This document shows, one piece after another, positions 92 through 40,501 of a DNA stretch of 64,000 nt (position 1 is the first letter of the stretch; every line of letters starts with the position of its first letter). Below the pieces are notes generated by a model. It was not told the DNA's origin, did not search any database, and saw only the letters and a program-made list of their open reading frames with translations. The stretch covers positions 124,001-188,000 of IMG/VR virus record IMGVR_UViG_3300042922_000542; one strand, 5' to 3'. A program made the translations under genes and the position numbers.

Positions 92-101
92 ATAATATAT
101 A
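92..101 (-). promoter_or_regulatory. early-type promoter motif TATATATTAT
   Basis: Same 10-mer recurs upstream of many non-structural genes in the window. Confidence 0.55.
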
Positions 102-181
102 ACTATATTCGATTTAGGCATGTATTTAAATCAATATAAATATAATAAAATTAATTTGTAATTTTATATTAAAAAAATAAT

Positions 182-379: not shown

Positions 380-1225
380 CGTTCTATTCACATAAGTTCG
401 CAACACCTATGCAGTTCTCTTATGAACTTCCCTAACTTTCATTAGGATACTAGACTATATCTTTACTCTACTGAATTAGAGTACATCTCGTTTCCCATTA
501 CTCTACTATCTTGAAAATAGCAGCCTGTCATTGGCTTACAGGGGTACTCCCATTACTGGGATAGTCGTTGAGGCTGATTCATAATATTAATTGAATTTAT
601 AATAACTCTGGTAAATTATTATATCTTCGTAATTATTCTGGTAAATTACTATCTGCTTCCCCTAGCGATGTCCCATTCTAAATTGTTTACGTTGTTATTG
701 GTCTTGTTCCCGTCTATATGACGAACACAAATCCATCCTTCTGGATTAGGGATAAATGTTCTGGCTACTAATTGATGAACTCTGATCTTATGTATAACTC
801 CTTTGTGTTCAAGTATTACATACAAGGAACCATTTCGGTTGCTACATTGGTCTAATGACTTTCCTGTTATCTTGTCCTTTACATCACCATTTGTACTGAC
901 TCTATATTGGGATCTCTTACCCTGTAGGTATATATCCCTCCATGATGTTTTATTTTTACCCATTAAGCAATTTATCATTTCTATACCCTCATTTATATTT
1001 TTTACCAGATAATATTTAATATTAATATTATGAAGCTTGCCTGCGGATTTGCAATATATCCTTAACATTTTTACTATACCTTAGGAATTACCCCTTGCCA
1101 TTATAACATCACTGTTATTATTTAGTAGTTAAGGCTTTATGCATCCAATTATCAATTTATAATAATCAGATAGAGTTCAAGTAACTCTGGTCCCCGCATA
1201 TATGAGATGATCGGCGACTCATTCC
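380..1225 (-). mobile_element. group I self-splicing intron (846 nt) with homing endonuclease ORF
   Basis: 5' splice site after U (GACGGU) pairs with IGS GCCG(A)UC giving a U.G wobble; intron ends in G (AGAACG|GAT); P element UGCGGGGA, Q element AAUCCGCAG (1041-1049), R element UCAACGACUA (562-571), S element AAGAUAUAGUCU (452-463). Confidence 0.93.
649..978 (-). CDS. intron-encoded NUMOD4-HNH homing endonuclease
   Basis: WRDI..Y.VST.G.V (NUMOD4) plus VHQLVARTFIPNP..VRHIDGNKTNNNVNNLEW (HNH_3). ORF-track start 1068 overlaps the Q element; GAGGG RBS supports ATG at 978. Confidence 0.88.
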   Translation of the reverse strand: MINCLMGKNKTSWRDIYLQGKRSQYRVSTNGDVKDKITGKSLDQCSNRNGSLYVILEHKGVIHKIRVHQLVARTFIPNPEGWICVRHIDGNKTNNNVNNLEWDIARGSR

Positions 1226-2449
1226 ACCGTCAAAATCGGCATTCAGTCCAGGAAGTATACCAGATGGAATTGATAATGTCATATCATCGCTATCAATTTT
1301 GACATTACGAATTTTCATCTTTAATATACTACCAAACGTTATTGTCGGATTTCTATTAATTATTTTCCAAGGCTTATATTTTTTAAGTACTAATTGTATT
1401 ATCGAATATATGTATTCATCATATTGAAATTTAGATTTTAAATAATTATGGGCCTTTGTAATAGTCCATCCCCTATCATTCATTATCTCCCTGATGATTT
1501 TTCCTGAATATAAAACAATAAATGTTTTATATGACACATCAATTTCATCCAATTTGAGTGTCGGGTCTAGTACGATTACATTTCTGCCCGTATAGTTAAA
1601 CTGTCCACCTAATACGTTTGCTCTAGCCCATCCATGTTTACCATCGATGAGTGAGAAATTTAAATTCCATAATTCATTGACTCTTTGCTGAGCAGAGTAT
1701 AAGTATAATGGAACTTCTATAGGTGAAGCTGTTTTAAGATTTAATGTAATTGCTGTTAATGGATGCACGTGCTTGTCAATAGGACTGAAATAATATGATT
1801 CTGTAGTAATTCCCTGTGGACGTAATACTGTGCTATACACAGGTATTTTAGATGTCCATAGAGAATCTTTCTCCGCAATTAATGAATCAATTAAATCAGC
1901 CTTCATTTTTCTCTTCTGTCGATAATATAACATAATTTCTTCAAAGTTTTGATAGAACTCATTCAATCCAATATTATGATATTTTAACATTGATTTTTTA
2001 ACTTCGATATCATCACCGTACTTACGTATTACACCAGTAGATGTTATGATATTATCATTAGCGATTATATTCTCCAAATTCTTCTTACTTAAAGCGGATT
2101 GTAGTTTTTGATAATAATATGGATTTATTACTTTATACGGATAGAAGTTTAGCCATCCTGTATACAAAATATCCACATCGGTGTATTCTATCTTTGTATT
2201 ACACTCTGGACATATTTCACCCTCAAGTATAGCTCCGATGTAATGACCGCACTTGCATCTATACCTATCTGAAAATTCATTATTATCGCCATATGTAGTT
2301 CCATATAAGGGTGAGCGTGGCCCACCCATATTTCGTATAGATTTGTCGATATCACTAAACGGTTTATCCGTTATTAAGAAGCCTTTATCATTCATGATAT
2401 CATAGTAACATTCTGTCTCAAAGTTGATTCTTGAAAATTTCATTCGCAT
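1226..2449 (-). CDS. rpoC: exon 1 of non-virion RNAP beta'-N subunit (spliced product 460 aa)
   Basis: Zn motif RYRCKCG..CPECN, RP motif (STVLRP), GKHGWAR..VLG..NYTGRNVI, INRNPTI, GLNADFDG. Confidence 0.95.
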
Positions 2450-7601: not shown

Positions 7602-9629
7602 CTATAAAGATATTAAACTAGTTGTAATATTAGCTTTACCATTCGGGGTCTTAATTGGAATAGTTTCTAATTTGAATGCATCTAATACAGATCTAAAAGA
7701 ACTGCATACATCCGAGATGATTGTAGTGTAATCTATTAATTCTCTAATCCATTCAGGTGTTTCATGTATAGTTGACGGTATTGCGATAACTTTCATTCCA
7801 GCTTTAATTAATTCAGGATCCGATGATTTAAATATATTATTATAAATTAATTTATATTCTTCTGGATATTTATCTTTTATCTTATCTAGATCCTGTAAAC
7901 CTGTCACAACTGTCTTTACTAATTTAACTTTGTCCAATGAATATATTTTATTATTAGGATACATTGCATTCCATACTGCCACTGCTTTATATACTTGAAC
8001 CGACCATGGTTTCTTATAAGCATCTCCTGATTTATAACTCTGAGGTTTGAGATATTGAGTTCCACCTTGTTTTAGATCATGATATATTTCCTTCTCAAAT
8101 CTTTTTACCTCTCGCATCAACTCATGTAGTTGCAATTCCTCTGAGAACAAAATATATTTTTCTAGCATTTTTGTAAATACCTTAGTAACGTGATCGCTAA
8201 CACCGGCCTTTATAAAATCCAATCCTTTGATTTCAGTCTTATATGGAACCATAATGTGACCCTCACGTAATACAATGCTACTAGCATATCTCTTTTTCTT
8301 TTGCATCAATAAAAATCGTTTAAATAGGAATTCATTTTTCATTGTCATTTCTTTACGTGCATCCGCATTTGCATTATGTAAGATACCGTATGTGTCAAGT
8401 ATTTTTTTAACTGGGGTATCGAGTAGCGTTGCTAATATGTTAACTGTTATCATTTCATTATACAAACGATTTCTATTGAATGTTTCATCCTTACATATTG
8501 CATCAAGTATAAATGTTACAAATTCATTAGTATACAATACATTTGAATCAGTATCAACTAACAATACCCTATTTCGGAAATGATTATTCAATTTAATAAT
8601 ACTATCCGGAGTTAAATAATTCACAAAGCACATCTGTGTTACGATTTCAACTAATTTTGTCATTTCATTCTTTATAATATCTGGAATCGTATATGGGTCT
8701 AGGAACATTTCTCGAGATACCCAATCATTGTATTTATTGATCTCTGAAAATTTATTTTTGAATTCATCAGGTATTGTATCTTCAGATGCTTCATATAATG
8801 GGAGATTACTTAATACATCCCGAATTATATTTTTAACTTTATCATGTCTCTCAATAAACGTGTGCAAGTTATTTGCATAAAATATATAACATAGCTCACT
8901 ATCAGTACAATTATCGATATATGCATTAATTGTAACTGTATCTTTTATATCGAATGGCATGAAATGTGATATAATACGATGACGGATTTCATCTCTACTT
9001 GGAATTACAACCCATTTTGGAATCTCATCTTCTTTTGCACAAATATGATTTAACCAATCAATACATTCATTAATATGGAAAAATTTCATATTATCGCCAA
9101 TATATCCTTCAAAGAACGCTGCCATTGTGGTTATGATACTTTGCGCCATAAGAGTTGTTGCAGCGGGTGAATATTTTGTATAGAAAGCTGCAGTTGGAGC
9201 ACCAGATCCGCCATATTCAGCATTCATTACAACTTTAACATTACTTTGACCAAGATCCAACATAGCATATTTATCATCACTAGGTTTATATTTAAACATT
9301 TCACCCTTGATGCTTTTTCTTTCCTTCTTTAACGATCGGAGCATGTTTGACGTTGGAGACTGTAATACTTCAGGTTGAACATAGAAAGTAGCATTACCTG
9401 ATACAACCGGACACTTTGTATCAATCCAATGACATAAATCAACTAAATTTGTTACTAAATTTTCTTTTGTTACATTATTATCCATAATTATCGTCGGATT
9501 CGACATATCTTGTTTCATACTTTTTATAACAGTTTTTCTAACAAGTTCTGCATCTAAGGTTGGATCCATTTTCAAGATGGTGTCAACTGCTGTTTCTACA
9601 TATTTTGATTTAAAACTCATACTCATCAC
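7602..9629 (-). CDS. polB: family B DNA polymerase, phiKZ/AR9-type split catalytic subunit
   Basis: KVVMNAEYG (motif B), VDTDS (motif C), KKRYA, EIKGLDFIK; no exonuclease domain and no motif A in this ORF. Confidence 0.9.
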   Translation of the reverse strand: MMSMSFKSKYVETAVDTILKMDPTLDAELVRKTVIKSMKQDMSNPTIIMDNNVTKENLVTNLVDLCHWIDTKCPVVSGNATFYVQPEVLQSPTSNMLRSLKKERKSIKGEMFKYKPSDDKYAMLDLGQSNVKVVMNAEYGGSGAPTAAFYTKYSPAATTLMAQSIITTMAAFFEGYIGDNMKFFHINECIDWLNHICAKEDEIPKWVVIPSRDEIRHRIISHFMPFDIKDTVTINAYIDNCTDSELCYIFYANNLHTFIERHDKVKNIIRDVLSNLPLYEASEDTIPDEFKNKFSEINKYNDWVSREMFLDPYTIPDIIKNEMTKLVEIVTQMCFVNYLTPDSIIKLNNHFRNRVLLVDTDSNVLYTNEFVTFILDAICKDETFNRNRLYNEMITVNILATLLDTPVKKILDTYGILHNANADARKEMTMKNEFLFKRFLLMQKKKRYASSIVLREGHIMVPYKTEIKGLDFIKAGVSDHVTKVFTKMLEKYILFSEELQLHELMREVKRFEKEIYHDLKQGGTQYLKPQSYKSGDAYKKPWSVQVYKAVAVWNAMYPNNKIYSLDKVKLVKTVVTGLQDLDKIKDKYPEEYKLIYNNIFKSSDPELIKAGMKVIAIPSTIHETPEWIRELIDYTTIISDVCSSFRSVLDAFKLETIPIKTPNGKANITTSLISL

Positions 9630-9664: not shown

Positions 9665-9692
9665 ATTAATATTAAATATGTAAATTTAATAA

Positions 9693-9722
9693 TATATAGG
9701 AGTCGTTTCGGACTCCTATATA
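9693..9722. terminator. intrinsic terminator after 9736 ORF
   Basis: TATATAGGAGTC-gtttcg-GACTCCTATATA stem, T-tract on minus strand. Confidence 0.75.
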
Positions 9723-12042: not shown

Positions 12043-12044
12043 AT

Positions 12045-12054
12045 TATATATTAT
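12045..12054 (+). promoter_or_regulatory. early-type promoter motif TATATATTAT
   Basis: 33 nt upstream of ATG 12087. Confidence 0.55.
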
Positions 12055-12565: not shown

Positions 12566-15500
12566 ATGATTGATAATATAACCACTGGAATTGAATTAAG
12601 TAATTTAGACTATGATACATATGCTCTTACACAAGACGGTTCATTTTCAGAAGCATATAAATTTACATCAATTGAATTTAATCGAATATATACTTCAAAA
12701 GTTCGTTTACCAGATGGAAAGAGTAATATCATATATTTATTATCTGATACATTTGATAAAACAGTTGATTTATTAAATCACAATAGTATTAGTATACCAC
12801 CTACATATCGTAAAGTATATTATCCAATTGTGAAGCAAGGAACATTTCTCAATAGACGTTATCGTATGAATTTTCTTAAAGCTAAAGTTGAAAGGGATGC
12901 ATTCATAAAAACTCAAACAAATCGAAAAAGGATTGCATATCCAAGTAGAACCATTTCAGCAACATCTACTGATAATTTATTTTTCATTACATCTGATTTA
13001 TATAATGTAGTCTCACCTGTAATGAAAAATGTTTCGATTAATAAATTAATGAAAACATTTTTTAATGATTTTATTGATATACTGCAGTCAATGACACCTG
13101 CTAATCAGGAGGCTAAAGGTCCTGAATTTAGTAATAGAATCTTAATCGTCGATGCAGATGCATTTAGATTCTCGGGTGGATCGTTAACTGAAAATAAAAC
13201 AAATCTATTATTTTTATTATATCTATCATTTTTAAGAACTCGTGACAACTCAGCAACGGGTGCTGATATTGATATAGTTATATTAAGTAAAAATTTACTT
13301 ATGAAATTTAATCCTGCAAGAATAAATCCAAATAAATTTAATAAATTTAGAACAGCATTATTTAGAATAATGAAAACCAATTTGGATGATTATACTGCAA
13401 CATTAACTGAGGATGAACAAAAGGAACTTACGATATCATCTGATGATATAATTACGAAAAATATAGTAGATAAAAAGGTTGATGTTTATACAAAATACAG
13501 TTCACCTGCAGTACGTACTGCATTAGCAAGTGCTATTGATAGTGAATTACGTTCAAAACATATGCAATCAATGGCTCGTGAAGATATAACTAAATCTACG
13601 CAAAACGAAATATCTACTGGTAAAAAAATGACTGGTAAAGATTATGATAATATTAATCACTCGATCGAATATAAAATGTCTAAAACTGTAGTGAATGATT
13701 TGAGTAGAACGCCTAAGACTGTTAAAGACTCTCAAGATACAAGAAAGCGTGATTTATTTAAATCGGTTATCGGTGGCGGTTATGAACCTCTCGTTAGTGA
13801 AGAAGAAATTGATATGGGTGCAGTTGAGGATGATATTATCGGTAAACAGGATCCTGCGGAGTTGGATGATTATATCGATAATGTATCAGATGAAATTGAT
13901 AATATCATATTAAATGATAAAAGCATTGCTGAAGATATAATTGATGAAATACAAACTCGTACGATTCCTATGGGTAGTAAACGAAACTCCCCAGTTAATG
14001 GACCATTAGATGAGAAACTAAGGGAACAACAGAAAAAGGTTGTCGTTAGGGATTCTACAATAGAAGAAATTTTATCACGTGAAAATTCAGCAATACCTGT
14101 TCAAACCGATGATAAGTCCGCAAGTTTCAAAAGCTTAAATCCGAATGTTAAAACTATTACGTTTGCTAACTTTGATAAGACTTATATAGAGGAATTATAT
14201 AGTGCCGATTTAGTTGCAGTATTCAATTCACTACAGGATAAATCAACGCCGTTTTATATAACATCGATTGATATCACCGATGCTTCAACTGCGTTAGATC
14301 TTAAAGAAACATGGAAAGTACACCTAAAAGATGAAACTGGTAAGTCCCATACTATTACGGTAGATATACCAAAATTTTATCAAAATAAATTCTTATGGCT
14401 CGGCGGCAATAAGAAAATGATAATGAAACAAAATCTATATAATCCAATAGTAAAAGACACGGCAGATTCAGTTATAATAACAACTAACTACAATAAAGTC
14501 ACTGTAACTCGTAGAGCTACAAAATCATTTGCTCAAATTGAAAATTTATTTTCACTGGTTAAAAAAGTGGATGATGTCGAAATGTTTATTGCAGGTGATG
14601 CATCTAAAATAAACATGAAATATATATCGACATTAGAATATGATGAGATCGGTAAATCATTATTTAAATTTAAATCGGGTGATTGTGAATTATTCTTTAA
14701 TAGGGAATATATTAATAATAATATTAATACCACAGAGACTATTGGTAACAATGAATTTATTATAGGTTTCGAAGGTAAAACGCCTGTAATCATACATGAA
14801 GATACCGGTAAAGATAGAAATAATAGAACAATCATCGAAGTCATATATCAAAATCTATCTGATGAACATAAGGCTATATTTGATTCGACTAAGGCTAGAA
14901 AACAAGCTATGTATGCTGAAGGAAAATTATTAGGTCAATTTGTTCCAGTGATTGTGACATTGATAGTATGGAATGGAATAACTAAAACATTAGACGCGAT
15001 GGATATCCAATGGCAATTCCATAAAGATGTAAAACGATTACCAAAAATGAATTTTAATATGAGTTATATTAAATTTGAAGATGGAATCCTTGAATATGAA
15101 TCAAACCTATTTACCCAGCTCATATTAAATGGATTAAATAAGCTAGGACCTGAACACCTTACATTTGAATCATTAAATGATGAAAGTGGATATATTGAAT
15201 ATCTCCATTCAATATTCGGTACATATACAATCGTGACACAGTTCAGAACATTCTATGAATTTTTAGTAGATCCTGTAACAAAAGATATTTGCCGAGATAT
15301 GTTTTTACCACAGACACCTGAAGGCCTTATGATACATTCTGTAAAATTATTAGCAAATAATGCATATATTAATAAAGCATCAGATAAATCATATAGAATT
15401 AGATCTGTGGAAATAATACCCGCTATATTATATAATAAAATAGCTGCACAATACACGAAATATGTTACATCGGGTAGAAGAATACCATTTAGTTTACCAA

Positions 15501-17050
15501 AAGAAACTGTTATCAAAGAATTATTAGCAGTTAACACGGTTGAGGATTATTCAACTCTTAACCCAGCAATCGAAATTGGTAAATCATATGGAATATCAGC
15601 GAGAGGTTATAAAGGTTCTAATACCGATAGATCATATGATGAGGAAAAACGTTCATACGATGAATCATCAATTGGTAAACTAGCGATGTCATCTCCAAAT
15701 GATGCCAATATCGGTATAACTCGTGAGTTAGTTGTTGAGCCTACAATTACAAATGCAAGAGGGTGCCGCGCACCAGTAGAGGATCTCGACGACCTTAAGG
15801 ATGTTAATATATTTAGTCCTGTGGAGCTTTTGACACCCGGTACTGTAAGAATGGATGATCCAATACGTACTGCAATTGCAGGTAAACAAACTCGTCACTT
15901 GGTTCCTGTTGCAAATGCATCTCCTGCGTTAATATCTAATGGATTTGATGAGGCGATTCAATTTCATCTCTCATCGGACTTTGTTGTTAATGCGGAAGAA
16001 GATGGTGAAGTTGTAGAAGTAAATGAAGAAGTTGGTTTCATTATCGTTAAATATAAATCAGGTAATACACAGGCAATAAACATTAATCCTGAAATAGTAA
16101 AAAATGGCGGTGGAGGATTCTATCTATCAAATACTTTAAGAGCGACTGTTAAATTGCACGATAAATTTAAAAAAGATGATGTGTTGGCATATCATGATAA
16201 ATATTTTAAATTCTCAAAGAATAATGGATTGCGTTTTGCTATAGGTCCGCTTGTAAAATGCGCATTTATATCAACATATAATACCTATGAGGATGCTGGT
16301 ATATGTACAGAAAAATTGGCGGATATGATGAAAACATCCATCGTATATAAAGAGGTTGGTACGTTTAAACGAAATTCAAACGTAATTAATATGGTTAATG
16401 TAGGTGATCATGTTAATATTGGAGATTCATTAATTAAATATGATACATCGTTTGATGACACTGAAATTTCAAAACTCATGGCTCATCTGTCGGATGAAAA
16501 TAAAGAATTGATTGAAGAAACCTCCAAGAATGATGTTATAACGCAACATGCGGGTAAAGTTGTTGACATTAAGATATTTACTCTACATGATCCTTCTAAT
16601 CTATCACCAACTTTAGGTGATGTTGTTAAAAAATACTTTGATGTAGGATTATCTAGAAAAGAATTATTAACGAAATATGATTCATCTGAAGGAATTATAA
16701 AAGCTGGTTATCTATTAACAGAAACAATTGAGCCGGTTGTATCTAGATATAATGATATTAAAGGTATAAAGACTGATGTGTTAATAGAATTTTATATTGA
16801 ACATGGTGATGTTGCCGGCATCGGTGATAAAATAGTATTATACGGACCTAATAAGCAGATTATCTCTGAAGTAATTCCAAAAGGATATGAACCATACTCA
16901 GAATTACATCCGGATGAGGAGATATCAGTATTTACAAGTCCGGGTACTATAGCAAGGCGTATGACATCAAGTATTATTCCTATTTCTATGGGGATGAAAA
17001 TCATGGTCGAGCTAAAAAGAAAAATTAAAGATATTATAAAATATAAGTAA
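12566..17050 (+). CDS. rpoB: virion RNAP beta subunit, large N-terminal part (phiKZ gp178-like)
   Basis: GKLAMSSP.DANIGITREL, DDPIRTAIAGKQ.RH.VP, GDKIV.YGPNKQIISEVIP, SPGTIARRM; 1494 aa with a long N-terminal extension. Confidence 0.9.
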   Translation: MIDNITTGIELSNLDYDTYALTQDGSFSEAYKFTSIEFNRIYTSKVRLPDGKSNIIYLLSDTFDKTVDLLNHNSISIPPTYRKVYYPIVKQGTFLNRRYRMNFLKAKVERDAFIKTQTNRKRIAYPSRTISATSTDNLFFITSDLYNVVSPVMKNVSINKLMKTFFNDFIDILQSMTPANQEAKGPEFSNRILIVDADAFRFSGGSLTENKTNLLFLLYLSFLRTRDNSATGADIDIVILSKNLLMKFNPARINPNKFNKFRTALFRIMKTNLDDYTATLTEDEQKELTISSDDIITKNIVDKKVDVYTKYSSPAVRTALASAIDSELRSKHMQSMAREDITKSTQNEISTGKKMTGKDYDNINHSIEYKMSKTVVNDLSRTPKTVKDSQDTRKRDLFKSVIGGGYEPLVSEEEIDMGAVEDDIIGKQDPAELDDYIDNVSDEIDNIILNDKSIAEDIIDEIQTRTIPMGSKRNSPVNGPLDEKLREQQKKVVVRDSTIEEILSRENSAIPVQTDDKSASFKSLNPNVKTITFANFDKTYIEELYSADLVAVFNSLQDKSTPFYITSIDITDASTALDLKETWKVHLKDETGKSHTITVDIPKFYQNKFLWLGGNKKMIMKQNLYNPIVKDTADSVIITTNYNKVTVTRRATKSFAQIENLFSLVKKVDDVEMFIAGDASKINMKYISTLEYDEIGKSLFKFKSGDCELFFNREYINNNINTTETIGNNEFIIGFEGKTPVIIHEDTGKDRNNRTIIEVIYQNLSDEHKAIFDSTKARKQAMYAEGKLLGQFVPVIVTLIVWNGITKTLDAMDIQWQFHKDVKRLPKMNFNMSYIKFEDGILEYESNLFTQLILNGLNKLGPEHLTFESLNDESGYIEYLHSIFGTYTIVTQFRTFYEFLVDPVTKDICRDMFLPQTPEGLMIHSVKLLANNAYINKASDKSYRIRSVEIIPAILYNKIAAQYTKYVTSGRRIPFSLPKETVIKELLAVNTVEDYSTLNPAIEIGKSYGISARGYKGSNTDRSYDEEKRSYDESSIGKLAMSSPNDANIGITRELVVEPTITNARGCRAPVEDLDDLKDVNIFSPVELLTPGTVRMDDPIRTAIAGKQTRHLVPVANASPALISNGFDEAIQFHLSSDFVVNAEEDGEVVEVNEEVGFIIVKYKSGNTQAININPEIVKNGGGGFYLSNTLRATVKLHDKFKKDDVLAYHDKYFKFSKNNGLRFAIGPLVKCAFISTYNTYEDAGICTEKLADMMKTSIVYKEVGTFKRNSNVINMVNVGDHVNIGDSLIKYDTSFDDTEISKLMAHLSDENKELIEETSKNDVITQHAGKVVDIKIFTLHDPSNLSPTLGDVVKKYFDVGLSRKELLTKYDSSEGIIKAGYLLTETIEPVVSRYNDIKGIKTDVLIEFYIEHGDVAGIGDKIVLYGPNKQIISEVIPKGYEPYSELHPDEEISVFTSPGTIARRMTSSIIPISMGMKIMVELKRKIKDIIKYK

Positions 17051-18515: not shown

Positions 18516-18788
18516 TTATATTATGCAGCAAACAAATTTGCATCCTTGTTTTTCATGTTGGGTTAAATCAATATATTTTTCCAACAAATGATAATCGTCT
18601 GGTAATATTTCGACGTAATCATCGCCACCTTTATTTTTCTTATATAAGGCCGCTCGTATATCATAAAATTCAATGAGTGGTCTTCTTTCCTCAAATATTA
18701 ATGGCGCATTTTTAAATTCGTCAACCCAGGGAAGTAATGTCGTATTAGTTTCTTCTTTTACTTGAAATATACTAAATTCAGTTGCCAT
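18516..18788 (-). CDS. hypothetical protein
   Basis: 90 aa, overlaps the upstream stop. Confidence 0.6.
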   Translation of the reverse strand: MATEFSIFQVKEETNTTLLPWVDEFKNAPLIFEERRPLIEFYDIRAALYKKNKGGDDYVEILPDDYHLLEKYIDLTQHEKQGCKFVCCII

Positions 18789-19218
18789 TTATAGACCCTC
18801 TCAATATATTCGATGTACACTTTTCCATATGATGCATATGAATTTCCGAAAGTTCATTCTTCATAGTGTATCCCACCTTTATTGCATATACCAATGCATC
18901 CTGAATCGGCATATTATCAGCAATCGCAACTTTAATCACCGCCCTAAAACAATTATCAGTTTCATATAATCGCAATAGTTCCGGATCATTTACGATAAAA
19001 TCTTCAATTGATGTATATCGATTAGTTTCACCTGTTGTTGTTACATGAATATGTTTAGAATTTTTTTCCATAAGATATTTTGCATCTGAATAATCACCAT
19101 GGGTTATTAAATTATTAACTACACTCATTAATTCAATATTATTATTTACCATATTTATGTCAGCGCATTGTTTCCTAAATTGATTATTATTAATAGCATT
19201 ATTGATTATTGAACACAT
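18778..19218 (-). CDS. hypothetical protein
   Basis: 146 aa, GGGGAG RBS. Confidence 0.65.
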   Translation of the reverse strand: MCSIINNAINNNQFRKQCADINMVNNNIELMSVVNNLITHGDYSDAKYLMEKNSKHIHVTTTGETNRYTSIEDFIVNDPELLRLYETDNCFRAVIKVAIADNMPIQDALVYAIKVGYTMKNELSEIHMHHMEKCTSNILRGSINGN

Positions 19219-19900: not shown

Positions 19901-20290
19901 TTATATGGATAGTAATATAGTTAATGGATCCCTCTCATCTTTATGAATTTCATTAAGCCTAAAATTATATTCTGTTCGACCTGCCTTAAATTCCTCAAGT
20001 TTTATTTGTGATTTTTCAGCTGCTTCTTTATAACTATTGGCATGTACATAAATAGTCTTCATATGATCGCGGTGATCACAAAATCCATCACAATAGTTAT
20101 GAGTTATTTCGGTAAAGAAAATCATAGGTTGTTCTAATTCCATATCTTCTTCAACTATATAGTACTCAATCGTTCCATGTATTAACCTAACTGGAGAAAT
20201 ACATTCTTTACTTTCAGCCTCGACAAACTTGGTTGATAAGTATAATTTTCTAGATTTATCATGAAATATGTCTATTTTATATCTTGGCAT
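19901..20290 (-). CDS. hypothetical protein
   Basis: 129 aa overlapping the upstream gene end. Confidence 0.65.
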   Translation of the reverse strand: MPRYKIDIFHDKSRKLYLSTKFVEAESKECISPVRLIHGTIEYYIVEEDMELEQPMIFFTEITHNYCDGFCDHRDHMKTIYVHANSYKEAAEKSQIKLEEFKAGRTEYNFRLNEIHKDERDPLTILLSI

Positions 20291-21699
20291 ATTACCACCG
20301 TCCTATCACATTTTTGTTTAGCAACTAGAATTGGAATGTTTAGAATATTTGCTAAAATTATTAGGTCACCATTCATAACATACTCTTTATCATTAATATT
20401 AATATTGCTAAAATATTCACTAAGATCAATAAATGATAATTCATTTATTATTTTATCATTAATATATTCATTTTCATCATTTAGACATCTAGTGCGTTTC
20501 CAATAATTTTTCATTTTATATAATTTATCATCAGTTACGTCTTTTACATTTGGCATATAATCACTCAACTCAAATACCATTGCCGATGCAATGGTATTAA
20601 ATTCAACCTCAGCATACATCCACTTTTCTGCAATATCCGCACCTACAAATTCATCAACGATATTACATTCCAGAATACGCCCGTTTGGTAGCATGTATTT
20701 ATATCTAGTTTTTGTGATTAATGGTTTACTAATAAAGAATTTCAAATATTCATATAACATTTTACCAATAGATATTTCTAACTCTGCTCTTGAAATAGTT
20801 CCATCTGATTTACCTGTTATAAAATACTCAGGTCCGGCGTCAATTGACGTCACCTTTCTAATTCGAATTTCATTATCAAATGATTCCAAATAACCCTGTT
20901 CGATATTACATTTTGATATACATTTTAAATTGTCAGGGAGTGATTCTATCAAATATTTCTTTTCAATTTCTTTGTCAAAAACAGTTATTGGTGTACAATT
21001 ATAGATCATATCTATAGATCCATCAATAATATTATCTGATTTTTCAGGTTGATTTACATTAGATGTAGGGCGCCATGAAGTCACTAGCTTATATATATTG
21101 CCATTATTTTTTACATGAACTGCCGCATCTAAATATTTATCTATCTTTTCAACCCATTCATTGAATCCTAGTTCAGACATTGCATGTAATAATATATTGG
21201 CACTATTCTTACCAAAGTTTCTCATAGCTAATAAATCATATGCACTTAATCTAAGAAGATCTTGAATATATTTGACATGACCACGCATTAAACTGTTACG
21301 TGTCAATGTTGGTAGATTCAAAATGGATATACTGGATCTCATCAATTCATATTGTGTAGGTTGATCAATGAGTTTAGTGATATTACTTAAATGATAATTT
21401 AATAGACGGATTACCTTAGACTTAATTTGGCTAACTCTTGTAGATGTTCTATCAATTATTAAAGCAATTTCATTTGAATTATGTCGATCGTTTCCGTCTA
21501 AACCGTAATAAAGGTTTATTACACGTTGCTGTATTTCTGTTAATTTTTTAATGCCATCCATTAATACTAATGAAAGTTCTTCAGATTTATTATATTTTGA
21601 TAATAAATCTTTCAATGTATTTGGATCTTTTTTGAATATATCTTGTAACAATTTTCTTTCACGTTCATTAACGTTGTCAATACTTATACAATGTCCCAT
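20272..21699 (-). CDS. fusion protein: sigma70 region-4 HTH + RNAP alpha-CTD-like domain + CYTH (triphosphate tunnel) domain
   Basis: LTEIQQRVINLYYGL..NEIA..TRVSQIKSKVIRLL (sigma4); ISILNLPTLTRNSL..IQDLL..LLAMRNFGKNS (alphaCTD); EIEKKYL..IEQGYL..IRIRK..TGK..RAELE..KTRY..AEVEF..DVT (CYTH). Confidence 0.85.
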   Translation of the reverse strand: MGHCISIDNVNERERKLLQDIFKKDPNTLKDLLSKYNKSEELSLVLMDGIKKLTEIQQRVINLYYGLDGNDRHNSNEIALIIDRTSTRVSQIKSKVIRLLNYHLSNITKLIDQPTQYELMRSSISILNLPTLTRNSLMRGHVKYIQDLLRLSAYDLLAMRNFGKNSANILLHAMSELGFNEWVEKIDKYLDAAVHVKNNGNIYKLVTSWRPTSNVNQPEKSDNIIDGSIDMIYNCTPITVFDKEIEKKYLIESLPDNLKCISKCNIEQGYLESFDNEIRIRKVTSIDAGPEYFITGKSDGTISRAELEISIGKMLYEYLKFFISKPLITKTRYKYMLPNGRILECNIVDEFVGADIAEKWMYAEVEFNTIASAMVFELSDYMPNVKDVTDDKLYKMKNYWKRTRCLNDENEYINDKIINELSFIDLSEYFSNININDKEYVMNGDLIILANILNIPILVAKQKCDRTVVICQDIK

Positions 21700-21719
21700 T
21701 TCAAGTTCTCCCTTAAATT

Positions 21720-21923
21720 TTATGATTTGAAGTGACCAGGATAGTTATTATGATATAATTCCACTTTCATTAAATATATCGACTCACCCGTTTCAAGCGT
21801 TTTACTTAATTCATCCAATAATGTCTCCCCAGTTTCATTATTATCAGGATCGACAGACCTTATAGTATAGCTACCATCGATATGTTCTATAATTATTGCC
21901 CCATTTTCAAATTCATTATACAT
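21720..21923 (-). CDS. hypothetical protein
   Basis: 67 aa, AAGGAG RBS. Confidence 0.6.
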   Translation of the reverse strand: MYNEFENGAIIIEHIDGSYTIRSVDPDNNETGETLLDELSKTLETGESIYLMKVELYHNNYPGHFKS

Positions 21924-21926
21924 AAT

Positions 21927-22244
21927 CTAATTCTCCTTTATAATTTCAATGCCGCCATGATCTGATAAATGTTTAGTTAGATCATCAATTGATATTAGAT
22001 TATTACTATATTTTTCATACAATTCTAAACATTGATCTATGAAGATAGGAATTTTCTTTTCAGCAGTTTTAGGCCAGTAATTATCATGTAGAACTGATAC
22101 TGGAATTGATAGCATCATAATAAATACTTTTTCAGTTGCATCCTTAACTGCGTCTTCTTTAAGTTTTTCCATTTGGCTCTCTGTGAGTATATATGTAGTT
22201 TCCTTTTTGCTTTTTTCACTACGCCTGCGCTCTGATCTATTCAT
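21927..22244 (-). CDS. hypothetical protein (MNRSERRR.. family seen in Firmicutes phages)
   Basis: AAAGGTG RBS before ATG 22244; IPV.VLHD..W motif. Confidence 0.65.
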   Translation of the reverse strand: MNRSERRRSEKSKKETTYILTESQMEKLKEDAVKDATEKVFIMMLSIPVSVLHDNYWPKTAEKKIPIFIDQCLELYEKYSNNLISIDDLTKHLSDHGGIEIIKEN

Positions 22245-22256
22245 ATAAAACACCTT

Positions 22257-22592
22257 TCATTTGAGTGAATTGTCTTCACAAATAATATGTTTCATACTAG
22301 CATCATCTACGTTATATACACTACCATTGAATGCTAAGTATTGATACCCAGTATTTTTTGCGATTTCCCTACATTTATGGTAATCAGACGGCCAGACATT
22401 TTGACTATTAAATACATCCTTCCATAATAGCGAAAGGACCGTAGATGAGGCGGTCCCTTCATGTTTATCACATTCTATTTCAGTAGCCTCTGCATCTGGA
22501 TCTATTCCATTCATTCTGAAAAACATATCATCAAGTCCCATTCCCGCAGCTTTCTCATGTGCTTCCCTGTTTGTCATTATTGACACCTCCAT
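22257..22592 (-). CDS. hypothetical protein
   Basis: 111-aa ORF; internal ATG at 22577 has a GGAGG RBS. Confidence 0.65.
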   Translation of the reverse strand: MEVSIMTNREAHEKAAGMGLDDMFFRMNGIDPDAEATEIECDKHEGTASSTVLSLLWKDVFNSQNVWPSDYHKCREIAKNTGYQYLAFNGSVYNVDDASMKHIICEDNSLK

Positions 22593-22635: not shown

Positions 22636-23148
22636 TTATCCAAAAACTATTTTACCTTTCTTTGTTGATATAATACCTGATAGCCAACCGAAACTATCCG
22701 CTTCACCAGGTCCTACATTAAAACCATTTTCTTTCATTATATTAATATTTTCCCAATTTGGGGTTCCTTCAGATGTTATAAGAAATATATTTGCCCATTC
22801 TTCAAGTTTGTCATTAGATATTATTTTCTCACCATCTGTTACTTTGCGACAGTAGTGACCAACTTCACCACTTGTTAAATCGGTAAATGTTTCACCTTCA
22901 TTTAGGTTATCCTCATCGGTTGTTAAATAAATATTGATACCTGGAATATCACCATCGACTTCTTCAATTGTCTTAAGAATCAATATAAAAGCATCGATGT
23001 TTTTGCACAATCGATCTTTAAGTCCTTCTTGTTTAAGTATAGGCTTTAATATTGTTACAGCAGTTTTAATATTCAATTCATTTACCTCCACAATTTTATT
23101 GTTTAATTCCACATGTATTAATAATATATCAATAATAATATAAAACAT
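22636..23148 (-). CDS. hypothetical protein (true start probably downstream of 23148)
   Basis: C-terminal GE.DSFGWL.G.I.T.KG..VFG motif; early promoter motif GATATATTAT at 23121-23130 lies inside the ORF-track 5' end. Confidence 0.65.
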   Translation of the reverse strand: MFYIIIDILLIHVELNNKIVEVNELNIKTAVTILKPILKQEGLKDRLCKNIDAFILILKTIEEVDGDIPGINIYLTTDEDNLNEGETFTDLTSGEVGHYCRKVTDGEKIISNDKLEEWANIFLITSEGTPNWENINIMKENGFNVGPGEADSFGWLSGIISTKKGKIVFG

Positions 23149-27432: not shown

Positions 27433-27442
27433 ATAATATATA
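27433..27442 (-). promoter_or_regulatory. early-type promoter motif TATATATTAT
   Basis: Recurrent motif. Confidence 0.55.
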
Positions 27443-27476
27443 ATACGTTATCGATTATATGCGGTATGCAATATGA

Positions 27477-29304: not shown

Positions 29305-29314
29305 ATAATATATA
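29305..29314 (-). promoter_or_regulatory. early-type promoter motif TATATATTAT
   Basis: Recurrent motif heading the 26312-29295 cluster. Confidence 0.55.
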
Positions 29315-29405
29315 ATTTTTAAATAGTATTCGTAATGTTTTCTATTATGATGCCAACAACCCCAATAATAAAAAAATACTTAACGATTGGATGTGAATTA
29401 ATAAA

Positions 29406-34012: not shown

Positions 34013-36154
34013 ATGTACGTTCTACCACATATACGAACAATACATGACTGTGAGAGGGAGTTTGGGGATGTTATAATCATTTCTCATTATAATACCTATG
34101 AAAAATTTGATGAATTATATTGGAAAGTATATTATGCAATTTGCGCATGTTATGAAATTTCAGAGTGCGTTAAATATAAAATACGTTTCAAATTTTACGA
34201 TTCCGATAGTAAGACCTATGAGCTATCTATGGTTAAATTTCTTTTAAATATAAACGCATGGAGACCACTAATTGAATTATATCAATTGCAAAAATATTAT
34301 CATTATAAATTAGAAGTATTGGATGAAAGCTTCATCATTAACAGAATGATGAGTGATACATTAAGAATAGGATTGGAATCTAAAGTATTGAAGACATTAG
34401 ATGATTATGGTATCTCATTTGAAAGATCATCTGATCTAATAAAGACTGTTATCGAAAGATATCAAGAGATATCGATCGAGTTTTCGTTGTTAGCTCCAGC
34501 CGGAATATTTACTCTTGAGAATTGTTTCCTAAACGATTATATGAATAATGAAAAGATTCGAGAGTTAAATAATACTGTAATATCACAAAATATTCAAACT
34601 GCCGATGTTGAGGAATTATTAAAAGAGAAGTATAATGAGCTTGTCGTAGAGTTAGGTAAAACTAAGAACCCGATATGGTATGTTAGTAAAGCAGGTAATC
34701 ACATCAAAGCTAAACAGGTACAAGAATTATTTATTTCGTACGGTCAGGTTCCGAATGTTGATGGTAATGTAATTCCTTATACGATGGAAGGTAATGGATT
34801 CAGTACTGGGTTTAATAGCCCATCTGCATATTATGTTGCCGCAACTGGTGCTAGATTATCGGCTATCATGAATAAAACTAAAATGGGTGAAGCGGGTTAT
34901 CTATCTCGTAATTTAATTTTATTGAGTAGAACAATGCATCTCTCTACAACTACATTTGATTGTGGTACTAAACACATGCTTGAATTATTTGTATCAAGTT
35001 CAACTATGTTGAGGAGATTGGAGAATCGTTGGTTTTGTGAATATTTGGGGGATCCATTACAATGCATTCATTATGAAACCCATAAACATTTAATTGGTAA
35101 GAAAATTTATGTGAGGTCTTTGTTAACATGTGCAGGTGGTGATGAGGTATGTCATGTATGTTACGGACGAGATAGTCACCTTGTTGCAAATATGCCAGGT
35201 ATGGCAATATTTAATACGGAAGTTTATTCAGAACCAGTATCGCAAAATATATTATCCACTAAACATTTATTGTTTACAGCCGCCAATAAATTGACATTCA
35301 GCGATTCGTTTGATAAATATTTTAAATTTAATGCAGGGGATATTTATTTGAAGGATCAAGATGAATGGAATAATGAGTTACCATTTGAATATTTAAGCAT
35401 AAGAATTGAAGAAAGCAATGTGCTATCCGTTAATGAACAGGATATAATTGAATATAGTACATTCGGTAATAATATAGAATCCCCATTCTTTATATATAAT
35501 AAAAAGACCGGCGAATATGATAAAATAGAAATAATAAATGCTGAATCCATGTTTATAGATGCGACATCTATGAAATTATTCAAAACAGTTATTGATAAGA
35601 AGCATGCGAATAGTAAGTTTTATGAACTTCCGCTACATACAATAGCTACTGAATTAGAGGGTCGTTTAATGTCAGTTGATATTAAAAATAATGGATTAAC
35701 CGATAACCTCTATATGATAATGGACTTATTAAATAAAAATGCATCTAAATATGATGATTATAATCAACTTGCACAATACTTCTTTGAAATGTTAATTAAT
35801 GTTGGAATCCGTTGCAGAAATATTCAAGCAGAAATTATATTAAATCGATTGATACGCGATAATAATGATATATATGCTAGACCTGATTTTTCTAAATTCA
35901 AAGCGCCTGAATATAAAATATTGACATTGAATCAAGCATTGATAAATACCAAAGCACCTACAATAGGTTTATCATATCAAGAAATCAAACGTCAATTACT
36001 CAGCGATGATCTTTATGCCAGTAAGAATGGAGCATCATATTTAGATCCTATGTATGCGACATCAATCAGTACTGATCGTTTAAAAGAAATACATAATAAG
36101 TTAAGAAATAAATTAAAGGAGAAAAAGGAAAATGAGCAATCAGAACATAAATAA
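34013..36154 (+). CDS. rpoC: non-virion RNAP beta'-C subunit (AR9 gp154 / phiKZ gp74-like)
   Basis: KQVQELFISYG..P, GARLSAIMNK..GEAGYLSR (bridge helix), DCG, LTC..VCHVCYG Zn site, EPVSQNILSTKHLL (trigger loop). Confidence 0.92.
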   Translation: MYVLPHIRTIHDCEREFGDVIIISHYNTYEKFDELYWKVYYAICACYEISECVKYKIRFKFYDSDSKTYELSMVKFLLNINAWRPLIELYQLQKYYHYKLEVLDESFIINRMMSDTLRIGLESKVLKTLDDYGISFERSSDLIKTVIERYQEISIEFSLLAPAGIFTLENCFLNDYMNNEKIRELNNTVISQNIQTADVEELLKEKYNELVVELGKTKNPIWYVSKAGNHIKAKQVQELFISYGQVPNVDGNVIPYTMEGNGFSTGFNSPSAYYVAATGARLSAIMNKTKMGEAGYLSRNLILLSRTMHLSTTTFDCGTKHMLELFVSSSTMLRRLENRWFCEYLGDPLQCIHYETHKHLIGKKIYVRSLLTCAGGDEVCHVCYGRDSHLVANMPGMAIFNTEVYSEPVSQNILSTKHLLFTAANKLTFSDSFDKYFKFNAGDIYLKDQDEWNNELPFEYLSIRIEESNVLSVNEQDIIEYSTFGNNIESPFFIYNKKTGEYDKIEIINAESMFIDATSMKLFKTVIDKKHANSKFYELPLHTIATELEGRLMSVDIKNNGLTDNLYMIMDLLNKNASKYDDYNQLAQYFFEMLINVGIRCRNIQAEIILNRLIRDNNDIYARPDFSKFKAPEYKILTLNQALINTKAPTIGLSYQEIKRQLLSDDLYASKNGASYLDPMYATSISTDRLKEIHNKLRNKLKEKKENEQSEHK

Positions 36155-36684: not shown

Positions 36685-36698
36685 CTTATTTTTTTATT

Positions 36699-36708
36699 TA
36701 TATATTAT
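36699..36708 (+). promoter_or_regulatory. early-type promoter motif TATATATTAT upstream of ppk1
   Basis: Recurrent motif immediately after a terminator. Confidence 0.6.
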
Positions 36709-40488: not shown

Positions 40489-40491
40489 GAT

Positions 40492-40501
40492 TATATATTA
40501 T
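40492..40501 (+). promoter_or_regulatory. early-type promoter motif TATATATTAT upstream of the kinase
   Basis: Recurrent motif. Confidence 0.55.

What the first reader, a model, noticed from the sequence alone, without database searches (positions are those of the whole stretch)
20272..21699. sigma4 - alphaCTD - CYTH triple fusion
Seen: three recognisable domains in one 475-aa early protein. The sigma4 recognition helix reads TSTRVSQIK rather than TRERIRQIE. The alphaCTD has Leu and Asn at the positions I align to the UP-element contacts R265 and K298. The CYTH domain keeps ExExK, RxR, K, RxE, KxR and AEVE. Known: sigma4 and alphaCTD are the two main docking surfaces for bacterial activators, and CYTH enzymes act on triphosphates (PPPi, NTPs, class IV adenylate cyclase). 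Inference: a decoy that sequesters host activators or binds the beta-flap, coupled to a nucleotide or polyphosphate sensor/enzyme. I know of no description of this architecture.
Basis: partly seen in the sequence, partly recalled or inferred. Interest (0 to 1): 0.75.

Follow-up and report, generated by a model that had tools for sequence, protein, structure and literature searches.

The report
Phage RNAP-mimic fused to triphosphatase
A soil jumbo phage encodes one protein that joins copies of two bacterial RNA-polymerase docking domains (sigma region 4 and alpha C-terminal domain) to an intact triphosphate-hydrolysing enzyme; related phages keep the two halves as adjacent separate genes, which suggests they work together on the transcription machinery in a way not described before.

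Summary
Window 20272-21699 (-) is one uninterrupted 475-aa ORF with a good RBS. An independent 35-kb Logan contig at ~92x depth reproduces it with no differences.

- **Domains:** Sigma70_r4 and RNA_pol_A_CTD both pass Pfam thresholds. Both superpose on solved structures (target-normalised TM 0.8-0.93).
- **CYTH part:** residues 244-405 are missed by Pfam. They match the NE1496/NeuTTM triphosphatase by sequence (E 4e-13; profile E 1.7e-33) and by fold. All catalytic motifs are present. Published rules predict a hydrolase, not a class IV cyclase or ThTPase.
- **Fusion of a gene pair:** four related phage contigs carry sigma4-alphaCTD (~240 aa) immediately upstream of a separate CYTH gene. The window protein is therefore a fusion of a conserved pair.
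- **Rarity:** it is the only triple fusion seen among 1.84 billion representative proteins. The two-domain sigma4-alphaCTD module, however, recurs in uncultured phages and in some Clostridia, always uncharacterised.
- **Phage:** a complete 246-kb AR9/PBS1-like jumbo phage with its own multisubunit RNAPs and no sigma region 2. The operon is headed by an AR9-early-like promoter motif.

Best reading: an early host-takeover factor in which an RNAP-mimic module delivers a TTM hydrolase to the transcription apparatus. The target and the substrate remain untested.

The parts
20272..21699 (-). Whole 475-aa ORF (sigma4 - alphaCTD - linker - CYTH/TTM - tail), stop codon included
21708..21714 (-). Shine-Dalgarno AAGGGAG, 8 nt upstream of the ATG
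   Evidence: read directly from the sequence
21565..21699 (-). Residues 1-45: N-terminal helices, conserved in the phage relatives. They align to the part of FliA/WhiG-type sigma factors just upstream of region 4 (possibly a region 3 / 3.2 remnant).
   Evidence: 1rp3 alignment over 96 columns
21364..21564 (-). Residues 46-112: sigma-70 region 4 (4.1 + 4.2 HTH). Recognition helix TSTRVSQIK at residues 85-93.
21100..21363 (-). Residues 113-200: RNAP alpha C-terminal domain, including the post-domain F-N-E-W motif. L132 and N165 sit at the R265 and K298 positions.
20971..21099 (-). Residues 201-243: predicted disordered linker, equivalent to the C-terminal tail of the unfused relatives. Their conserved DYDG motif is degenerate here (IIDGS). 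This is the site of the ancestral gene boundary.
20485..20970 (-). Residues 244-405: NeuTTM-like CYTH / triphosphate tunnel metalloenzyme domain with all catalytic motifs intact
20275..20484 (-). Residues 406-475: acidic tail (net charge -6) found only in this protein, modelled with low confidence. It replaces the ~200-aa C-terminal domain carried by the CYTH proteins of relatives.
23115..23131 (-). Probable early (virion-RNAP-type) promoter heading the minus-strand operon: GATATATTATTAATACA, a 1-mismatch copy of the T-TATATATTAT-N4-ATA motif
   Evidence: AR9 early consensus in PMC5312081
17098..23148 (-). Co-directional cluster of 14 small genes, mostly ORFans, that contains the fusion gene. 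Three of them have homologs flanking the gene pair in relatives L001 and L002.

Best explanation
The gene is a real fusion of two genes that work together in a small clade of AR9/PBS1-like jumbo phages. These phages probably infect low-GC Bacillota.

- Part 1 is an 'RNAP-mimic' targeting module. It combines a sigma-factor C-terminal fragment (region 4, with a short upstream remnant) and an RNAP alpha C-terminal domain. It has neither sigma region 2 nor the alpha N-terminal domain, so it can be neither a sigma factor nor an RNAP subunit.
- Part 2 is a catalytically competent NeuTTM-type triphosphate tunnel metalloenzyme. It should hydrolyse a triphosphate-bearing substrate using two metal ions.

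I propose that the protein is made early from a virion-RNAP-type promoter and that the sigma4/alphaCTD module homes to the host transcription-initiation apparatus. Candidate targets are the beta-flap at the RNA exit channel, the regulators that normally touch sigma4 and alphaCTD, or -35/UP-type promoter DNA. The module would bring the TTM hydrolase there as part of host takeover.

Shown: the anatomy, the intact catalytic residues, the authenticity of the fusion, the conserved gene pairing, and the absence of sigma2 from the phage.
Inferred: physical cooperation of the two halves, the early timing, the host RNAP as the target, and the substrate.
For: - Domain identities come from sequence and fold.
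- The gene pair sigma4-alphaCTD followed by CYTH is adjacent and tightly coupled in 4 of 4 relatives: a TAATG stop/start overlap in L001 and 2-3 nt spacing in the others. It is fused only here. This is a Rosetta-stone argument for physical or functional coupling.
- The unfused proteins end in a conserved DYDG motif that has decayed in the fusion. This fits a docking peptide made redundant by the covalent link.
- Every invariant CYTH position is kept. The Vogt et al. rules (PMC8233210) give a hydrolase signature: no HF motif, both Arg of RxR kept, both Glu of ExE kept.
- The fusion is confirmed by an independent assembly at ~92x depth, and no other reading frame is open across the junction.
- The complete phage genome has no sigma region 2 and no second sigma4 or alphaCTD. 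The phage has its own multisubunit RNAPs.
- A promoter-like site of the AR9-early type heads the operon.
- Phages of Bacillota are already known to target the sigma4/alphaCTD junction. One example is phage G1 gp67, which binds sigmaA region 4 (PDB 4g6d among the hits; PMC3694059 listed).
Against: - No binding, activity or expression data exist. The host is unknown.
- The alphaCTD of this particular protein has lost the R265 and K298 equivalents that are critical for UP-element DNA binding. Three of five -35-contact positions in sigma4 differ from primary sigma factors.
- AR9-type phages do not need host RNAP (PMC5312081). The module could instead serve the phage's own polymerases.
- Standalone homologs of this CYTH subfamily are scattered in many phages with no transcription link. 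One homolog is fused to a Maf NTP pyrophosphatase, which fits plain nucleotide housekeeping.
- Only five loci support the gene pairing. Four of them are contigs of 3 kb or less.
Confidence: 0.45

Rival explanations
1. Pure decoy or competitor. The soluble sigma4 and alphaCTD surfaces titrate host regulators that normally contact them, for example Spo0A-type or Spx-type factors in Bacillota. Alternatively they compete with host sigma for the beta-flap and so shut down host promoters. The CYTH part would act independently on a small molecule (PPPi, polyP or NTP), and its fusion would only ensure co-expression.
For: - Sigma4 and alphaCTD are the two classic activator-contact surfaces. Structures of Spx-alphaCTD (1z3e), WhiB1-sigma4 (6ono) and phage G1 ORF67-sigma4 (4g6d) are among the best fold matches.
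- Loss of the R265/K298 equivalents fits a protein-binding role better than a DNA-binding role.
- The Oscillospiraceae sigma4-alphaCTD genes sit next to spo0A and a kinase.
- The closest characterised CYTH relative, NeuTTM, is a PPPi-specific enzyme.
Against: - It does not explain why the CYTH gene is adjacent in 5 of 5 loci and fused in one.
- R265 is kept in all four relatives where that position is visible.
- No interaction partner is known.
Confidence: 0.2
2. Positive transcription factor. The sigma4-alphaCTD module is the -35/UP-reading subunit of a split sigma factor, as in T4 gp33/gp55, B. subtilis SigO-RsoA or Tn916 Sig7-Sig8. Alternatively it is a two-headed DNA-binding activator. Either way it would direct the host RNAP, or one of the phage's own multisubunit RNAPs, to a class of phage promoters.
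For: - Sigma4-only subunits of split sigmas are established in Bacillota mobile elements and in T4 (preprint 10.64898/2026.10.01.756105).
- Their small sigma2-like partners escape standard profiles, and the operon is full of small ORFans.
- The R586 and Q589 equivalents of the recognition helix are kept in 3 of 4 family members. Both domains carry a net positive charge.
- Iyer et al. note that the beta-flap of group-1 jumbo-phage RNAPs has no known sigma-like partner (PMC7824862).
Against: - No sigma region 2 anywhere in the complete genome, and no RsoA-like hit among the neighbours.
- AR9 non-virion RNAP uses a different specificity subunit, gp226 (papers listed).
- AR9 early transcription needs no factor made after infection.
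- The role of the obligatorily linked TTM enzyme stays unexplained.
Confidence: 0.2
3. Incidental fusion. Stop-codon loss joined two neighbouring but functionally unrelated early genes. The CYTH part does ordinary nucleotide or polyphosphate housekeeping, as proposed for CYTH and MazG enzymes of jumbo phages. The junction has no mechanistic meaning.
For: - Iyer et al. suggest that jumbo-phage CYTH enzymes degrade unwanted NTPs (PMC7824862).
- A CYTH-Maf fusion exists in a homolog, and a TTM-DHH gene pair occurs in phage Nachito.
- The fusion is seen in a single genome.
Against: - Adjacency with stop/start overlap is conserved across relatives that share only about 30-40% identity in the sigma4-alphaCTD protein and whose flanking genes have been rearranged.
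- The conserved DYDG tail has decayed only in the fused form.
- The phage has ThyA and dUTPase, so the specific idea of excluding dTTP for uracil-DNA does not apply.
Confidence: 0.12

Closest known systems
NeuTTM / NE1496 inorganic triphosphatase (PDB 2FBL, 3TYP) and CthTTM: the bacterial TTM cluster of the CYTH superfamily
   Same: About 31% identity over the whole domain. Same 8-stranded tunnel fold. ExExK, RxR, K, RxE, KxR and ExE motifs all conserved.
   Different: Those enzymes are about 150-aa standalone proteins. Here the domain carries a 243-aa N-terminal RNAP-mimic module and a 70-aa acidic tail. The substrate is unknown, and Pfam's CYTH model does not reach threshold.
T4 gp33 (a beta-flap-binding sigma4 surrogate) and the sigma4-only subunits of split sigma factors (SigO of SigO-RsoA; Tn916 Sig7)
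   Same: A separate polypeptide carries only the sigma region-4 function, encoded by a phage or mobile element.
   Different: No sigma2-type partner is detectable in the phage. The sigma4 here is joined to an alphaCTD and an enzyme. gp33 has no sequence similarity to sigma4, whereas this domain passes the Sigma70_r4 threshold.
Phage inhibitors that act at the sigma4/alphaCTD/UP-element junction in Bacillota: phage G1 gp67; also T4 AsiA and the T4 Alt/ModA modification of alpha R265
   Same: Early phage factors aimed at exactly the two RNAP surfaces copied here. 4g6d (gp67 bound to sigmaA region 4) is among the sequence and fold hits. See also PMC3694059 (listed) and PMC5312081.
   Different: Those proteins bind or modify the host domains. 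This protein is itself made of homologs of those domains. No homology to gp67 or AsiA.
Uncharacterised two-domain sigma4-alphaCTD proteins of uncultured phages and of Oscillospiraceae
   Same: Same domain order, and the same (F/Y)(N/D)(E/D)W motif after the alphaCTD.
   Different: They are 187-250 aa with no CYTH domain. The bacterial members have a ~45-aa coiled-coil between the domains and lie next to spo0A and a kinase. No function is known for any of them. Common descent with the phage module is not established: the sigma4 parts show no BLAST-level similarity.
TTM-type RNA triphosphatases that are physically part of viral transcription machines: baculovirus LEF-4, the poxvirus capping enzyme D1, and fungal Cet1 bound to Pol II (from my own knowledge, not tested here)
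   Same: A triphosphate-tunnel enzyme tethered to an RNA polymerase. This is the only known setting in which a TTM fold is coupled to transcription.
   Different: Those belong to the Cet1-like branch (Pfam mRNA_triPase), which is not matched here. They serve eukaryotic mRNA capping, and no guanylyltransferase is present here. The resemblance is in architectural logic only.

Membership tests
Sigma-70 family sigma factor | Region 2 (core binding and -10 recognition) | tested here: not met
   No Sigma70_r2 in the protein or anywhere in the complete phage genome at E<=10.
Sigma-70 family sigma factor | Region 4 (HTH that reads -35 and binds the beta-flap) | tested here: met
   PF04545 scores 30.7 bits against a cut-off of 24.1. 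Target-normalised TM is 0.81-0.87 to Thermus sigmaA region 4.
RNAP alpha subunit (RpoA) | N-terminal dimerisation and assembly domain (RNA_pol_L / RNA_pol_A_bac) | tested here: not met
   Absent from the Pfam result. NCBIfam rpoA models match only their last ~65 positions.
RNAP alpha subunit (RpoA) | C-terminal domain with the DNA-binding '265 determinant' (R265, N268, C269, G296, K298, S299) | tested here: inconclusive
   The fold and the Pfam match are met. The N268, G296 and S299 equivalents are kept, but R265 is replaced by L132, C269 by S136 and K298 by N165.
CYTH / triphosphate tunnel metalloenzyme superfamily | Eight-stranded beta-barrel tunnel fold | tested here: met
   The AF2 model has 8 strands with pLDDT above 90. 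Foldseek's top 24 hits are TTM enzymes.
CYTH / triphosphate tunnel metalloenzyme superfamily | N-terminal ExExK, basic tunnel residues, and a C-terminal ExE metal site | tested here: met
   E244, E246, K248, R279, R281, K297, R304, E306, K330, R332, E364 and E366 are all present.
CYTH / triphosphate tunnel metalloenzyme superfamily | Match to Pfam PF01928 above the gathering score | tested here: not met
   No hit at E<=10. Homolog P0023 does pass, at 24.0 bits against 23.2. The NeuTTM match is E 4e-13 for the single sequence and 1.7e-33 for the profile.
Class IV adenylate cyclase (CyaB type) | HFxxxxExExK motif; first Arg of RxR replaced by a small residue; second Glu of ExE replaced by Ala (Vogt et al. 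2021, PMC8233210) | tested here: not met
   The sequence reads ITVFDK-EIEKK, so there is no HF. R279 and E366 are both kept. YpAC-IV is only rank 48 by fold.
Thiamine triphosphatase | Aromatic W/Y two residues before RxR (W/YxRxR) | tested here: not met
   The sequence is E-I-R-I-R.
Cet1-like RNA triphosphatase (Pfam mRNA_triPase) | Match to the Cet1-like family profile | tested here: not met
   No such Pfam hit at E<=10. Activity on 5'-ppp RNA cannot be tested with these tools.
Split (two-subunit) sigma factor | A sigma2-like partner protein (RsoA / Sig8 / gp55 type) encoded nearby | tested here: inconclusive
   None was found with Pfam, NCBIfam or PHROGs among the operon neighbours or genome-wide. 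Such partners are known to evade profiles.
Phage sigma4-alphaCTD + CYTH gene pair (defined here) | A sigma4-alphaCTD ORF directly followed by a CYTH ORF on the same strand | tested here: met
   Relative contigs L001, L002, L010 and L011 carry the two as separate genes. The window carries them as one ORF.

The most novel reading that the evidence does not exclude
The sigma4 module docks on the RNAP beta-flap at the mouth of the RNA exit channel, exactly where sigma region 4 sits in the holoenzyme. This would hold the TTM domain where the 5'-triphosphate end of a nascent transcript emerges. The enzyme would then remove the gamma-phosphate (or more) co-transcriptionally. That would be a bacteriophage counterpart of the first step of eukaryotic and viral mRNA capping, in which TTM RNA triphosphatases ride on the polymerase. 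The outcome could be marking host transcripts for 5'-end-dependent decay, or altering the 5' ends of phage RNAs. The AR9 transcriptome paper reports that early phage primary transcripts respond poorly to TEX treatment and suggests 5' dephosphorylation (PMC5312081). However, AR9 itself lacks this protein.
Probability: 0.12. Interest if true: 0.9.

Novelty: new variant of a known kind. Interest (0 to 1): 0.7.

Why it matters
If the two halves cooperate, this would be the first bacterial-virus case of an enzyme delivered to the transcription machinery by copies of the polymerase's own docking domains. It would give a function to a recurrent family of phage and Clostridial sigma4-alphaCTD proteins that nobody has studied.

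It would also qualify the published generalisation that phiKZ/AR9-type phages, which bring their own RNA polymerases, carry no sigma-derived proteins. It may connect TTM enzymes, whose bacterial roles are largely unknown, to RNA 5'-end or nucleotide chemistry at promoters.

The natural pairing of fused and unfused versions gives a ready experimental design.

Tried and rejected
- **Assembly chimera or frameshift:** rejected. An independent Logan contig is identical at ~92x depth, and the other frames are closed. Caveat: the run may be the source sample, and contigs hide rare variants.
- **Class IV cyclase, ThTPase or an inactive 'sensor' CYTH:** rejected on published signature rules.
- **dTTP exclusion for uracil-DNA, as in AR9/PBS1:** rejected. 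The phage has ThyA and dUTPase.
- **Full or split sigma factor:** no sigma2 and no RsoA-like neighbour were found. Left open only as a rival.
- **Searches for relatives that found nothing:**
  - the word-index search returned only the protein itself;
  - two IMG/VR pattern scans;
  - tblastn of the N-terminal module and of a bacterial member against 50,697 GenBank phages.
- **Full-length alignment A2:** it misaligned the short homologs. I modelled the two halves separately, so there is no model of inter-domain packing.
- **The ~200-aa C-terminal domain of the relatives' CYTH proteins:** not identified, beyond weak DUF4160-like hints. It is absent from this phage.
- **Sigma factor-TTM-DHH adjacency in Bacillus phage Nachito:** a single case, so I treat it as anecdote.
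- **Other fusion partners of this CYTH subfamily:** uninformative apart from one Maf fusion.
- **Viral sigma4-alphaCTD clusters in the ESM Atlas:** their sequences could not be retrieved, so I could not measure whether CYTH linkage is general.
Full report
**1.

Window 20272-21699 (-) is a single 475-aa ORF. An AAGGGAG ribosome-binding site lies 8 nt upstream of the ATG. P0001 is the id used here for this window protein.

Pfam places Sigma70_r4 at residues 50-98 (30.7 bits, cut-off 24.1) and RNA_pol_A_CTD at residues 117-168 (35.4 bits, cut-off 23.8). NCBIfam FliA/WhiG and RpoD models align residues 3-104 to their C-terminal ~100 positions, and rpoA models align residues 113-180 to their last ~65 positions.

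An AlphaFold2 model of residues 1-245 is confident for the alphaCTD (pLDDT 94-97) and fair for sigma4 (76-90). By Foldseek the two domains superpose on:
- Thermus sigmaA region 4 (1ku7, 1ku3, 1rio), target-normalised TM 0.81-0.87 at 1.0-1.9 A;
- alphaCTD structures (9dvt, 7vpd, 1z3e), target-normalised TM 0.89-0.93 at 0.7-0.9 A.

The recognition helix is TSTRVSQIK at residues 85-93. Against Thermus sigmaA (alignment) the equivalents of E. coli R586 and Q589 are kept, and those of R584, E585 and R588 are changed. The E. coli numbering comes from my own knowledge. Ungapped HMMER alignment to real alpha subunits puts L132 at R265 and N165 at K298, while N135, G163, K164 and S166 keep the N268, G296, K297 and S299 equivalents.

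The third domain is missed by Pfam's CYTH model, but other evidence identifies it:
- It matches the Nitrosomonas triphosphatase NE1496/NeuTTM at E 4e-13.
- A profile of 116 homologs matches at E 1.7e-33.
- Its model is an eight-stranded barrel with pLDDT above 90.
- Its best fold matches are TTM enzymes.

**2. It is not an artefact.**

A public soil-metagenome run holds the locus. Its independently built Logan contig (35 kb, depth ~92) covers window 20100-21900 with no differences. It may be the same sample, and contigs do not show minority variants. Across the junction the other two frames are closed, and no internal Shine-Dalgarno precedes Met231. In this genome the CYTH domain can therefore only be made as part of the long protein.

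**3. The genome.**

The window lies in a complete 246-kb virus record with terminal repeats and 30% GC. It encodes split beta/beta'-like subunits of multisubunit RNAPs and a divergent family-B DNA polymerase. The best matches for these, at 25-31% identity, are Bacillus phages AR9/PBS1, Staphylococcus S6-like phages and Listeria LPJP1.

It is thus a distant AR9-like jumbo phage, probably of a low-GC Bacillota host. Unlike AR9 it has ThyA and dUTPase.

An over-represented motif, T-TATATATTAT-N4-ATA, matches the core of AR9's early (virion-RNAP) promoter consensus AAATATATATTAT (PMC5312081). It occurs in 25 exact copies, each 16-111 nt upstream of a gene start on the same strand. The minus-strand operon that holds the gene is headed by a 1-mismatch copy. 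That site ranks 29th of 492,208 positions on the promoter PWM. Of the 29 sites at or above its score, 26 are intergenic, although only 7.6% of the genome is intergenic. 'Early' is therefore a reasonable inference, not a demonstration.

**4. The key new fact: a fused gene pair.**

An exhaustive HMMER search of 1.84 billion representatives found no second protein covering all three domains. It did find P0013 (245 aa) and P0050 (241 aa), which match residues ~7-208. Their contigs are L001 and L002. Two more contigs, L010 and L011, were found through the neighbouring gene.

All four contigs carry a sigma4-alphaCTD gene immediately followed by a separate gene. That second gene encodes a CYTH domain plus an unidentified ~200-aa C-terminal domain. 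The stop and start overlap as TAATG in L001 and are 2-3 nt apart in the others.

Flanking genes are homologous to the window's neighbours at 21927-22253, 22257-22592 and 18778-19218, so these are related phages.

The unfused proteins end in a conserved DYDG(D/S/N) motif. In the window protein the corresponding stretch is degenerate (IIDGS) and runs on for 13 residues into EIEKKYL, the start of the CYTH domain. The relatives' extra C-terminal domain is absent from this phage and is replaced by a 70-aa acidic tail that is modelled with low confidence.

Conserved adjacency in 5 of 5 loci, plus one fusion, is the classic signature of proteins that act together.

**5. How rare is the architecture?**

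The triple fusion is a singleton. The two-domain sigma4-alphaCTD module is not:
- The ESM Atlas lists at least 11 viral clusters (50-200 members each, 187-216 aa) carrying both Pfam domains. It also lists a 454-aa viral cluster and some Bacillota clusters.
- BFVD holds ~130-aa 'RNA polymerase alpha subunit C-terminal' proteins from uncultured phages.
- A family of ~205-aa sigma4-coiled-coil-alphaCTD proteins occurs in Oscillospiraceae MAGs. It sits in a conserved neighbourhood between two XRE regulators and a kinase plus spo0A.

None of these is characterised. I found no paper on them. No GenBank phage has a detectable homolog.

Iyer et al. state that no sigma factor is found in group-1 (own-RNAP) jumbo phages and that CYTH triphosphatases are scattered among jumbo phages (PMC7824862).

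**6. What the enzyme half is likely to do.**

By the signature rules of Vogt et al. (PMC8233210):
- A class IV cyclase needs HFxxxxExExK, a small residue in place of the first Arg of RxR, and Ala in place of the second Glu of ExE.
- A ThTPase needs an aromatic residue before RxR.

The protein has none of these. It reads ITVFDK-EIEKK and E-I-R-I-R, and it keeps E364-V-E366. A two-metal hydrolytic TTM is predicted.

The substrate cannot be read from the sequence. NeuTTM prefers PPPi, and one homolog is fused to a Maf NTP pyrophosphatase.

**7. What the N-terminal half can and cannot be.**

It lacks sigma region 2 and the alpha N-terminal domain, and the whole phage lacks sigma2. It is therefore neither a sigma factor nor an RNAP subunit.

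It could be the sigma4 subunit of a split sigma (precedents), but no partner is detectable.

Its alphaCTD has lost two key DNA-contact residues in this protein, although R265 is kept in all four relatives where it can be seen.

**8. Synthesis.**

I favour (0.45) an early host-takeover factor in which an RNAP-mimic module targets the host initiation apparatus and brings a TTM hydrolase with it. The rivals are:
- a pure decoy with an independent enzyme (0.2);
- a positive transcription factor or split-sigma subunit (0.2);
- an incidental fusion (0.12).

The most novel reading still open is co-transcriptional processing of nascent 5'-triphosphate ends from a beta-flap perch (0.12). The only support is the geometry of sigma4 in the holoenzyme, the precedent of polymerase-bound TTM triphosphatases in eukaryotic viruses (from my own knowledge), and a remark on 5' dephosphorylation of AR9 early transcripts.

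All of these readings need the experiments listed under next steps.

Noticed in passing
Relative contigs L001:2-355, L001:358-1095, L001:1095-2204; L002:196-921 and 925-1764; L010:3-299 and 302-1381; L011:2-724 and 727-1761: Four short metagenomic contigs from related phages carry the unfused gene pair. L001 also has a second alphaCTD-bearing paralog directly upstream, so the module is tandemly duplicated there. The CYTH proteins of these relatives carry an unidentified ~200-aa C-terminal domain with an NPPHFHFF motif.
   Followed up: partly
L006:10001-10618, L008:5331-5948, L015, L016 (Oscillospiraceae MAGs): A bacterial family of ~205-aa sigma4-coiled-coil-alphaCTD proteins sits in a conserved neighbourhood: two XRE regulators, the gene itself, a 490-aa HATPase_c kinase, spo0A and PPK2. 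This suggests a role in Spo0A-linked regulation. Uncharacterised.
   Followed up: partly
ESM Atlas clusters; BFVD entries such as A0A6J5M7I6: At least 11 viral clusters of 187-216-aa proteins carry both Sigma70_r4 and RNA_pol_A_CTD, and there is one 454-aa viral cluster. Small alphaCTD-only or sigma4-only proteins also occur in uncultured Caudovirales. Together they form a sizeable, unstudied class of RNAP-fragment proteins in phages.
   Followed up: partly
Proteins P0098, P0082, P0124: P0098 (1031 aa) consists of about 11 tandem alphaCTD-like repeats behind a signal-peptide-like N-terminus. P0082 (770 aa) and P0124 (649 aa) consist of 7-8 tandem sigma4-like repeats. These are odd architectures of unknown origin.
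   Followed up: no
Window 92-102(-), 9689-9699(-), 12044-12054(+), 27433-27443(-), 29305-29315(-), 36698-36708(+), 40491-40501(+); genome-wide list: A promoter-like motif, T-TATATATTAT-N4-ATA, lies 16-111 nt upstream of gene starts in 25 exact copies. It matches the core of the AR9 early (virion RNAP) promoter consensus. It implies a conserved virion-RNAP specificity in a distant relative.
   Followed up: yes
G000:C1:25316-26062(-) and G000:C1:33879-34328(+) (outside the window): The phage encodes a ThyA-family thymidylate synthase and a dUTPase. So, unlike AR9/PBS1, it probably does not have uracil-DNA, although a ThyA-like enzyme could also make a modified base.
   Followed up: partly
Window 1166-2449(-), 12566-17050(+), 34013-36154(+), 61078-63396(-); 7602-9626(-): Four genes for beta/beta'-like fragments of multisubunit RNAPs, and a divergent family-B DNA polymerase (PF20286). 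The 1494-aa product of 12566-17050 has a ~400-500-aa N-terminal part with no match in relatives.
   Followed up: partly
Window 22636-23148(-): The mechanical ORF probably starts too early. A GGAGGT followed by a TTG at about 23073 is the likelier start, which would leave the promoter-like motif in non-coding sequence.
   Followed up: partly
L012:3184-5474 (Bacillus phage Nachito, OP380492.1): In this SPO1-like phage, a sigma factor gene (with sigma region 2) is followed directly by a TTM homolog and an overlapping DHH/DHHA1 phosphoesterase gene. It is the only Bacillus phage in the collection with this TTM.
   Followed up: yes
Genome ends (G000:C1:1-127 and 246021-246147): The last ~127 bases repeat the first ~127. 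IMG/VR classes the record's ends as direct terminal repeats, but the length looks like an assembler k-mer overlap from a circular assembly rather than a biological terminal repeat.
   Followed up: no
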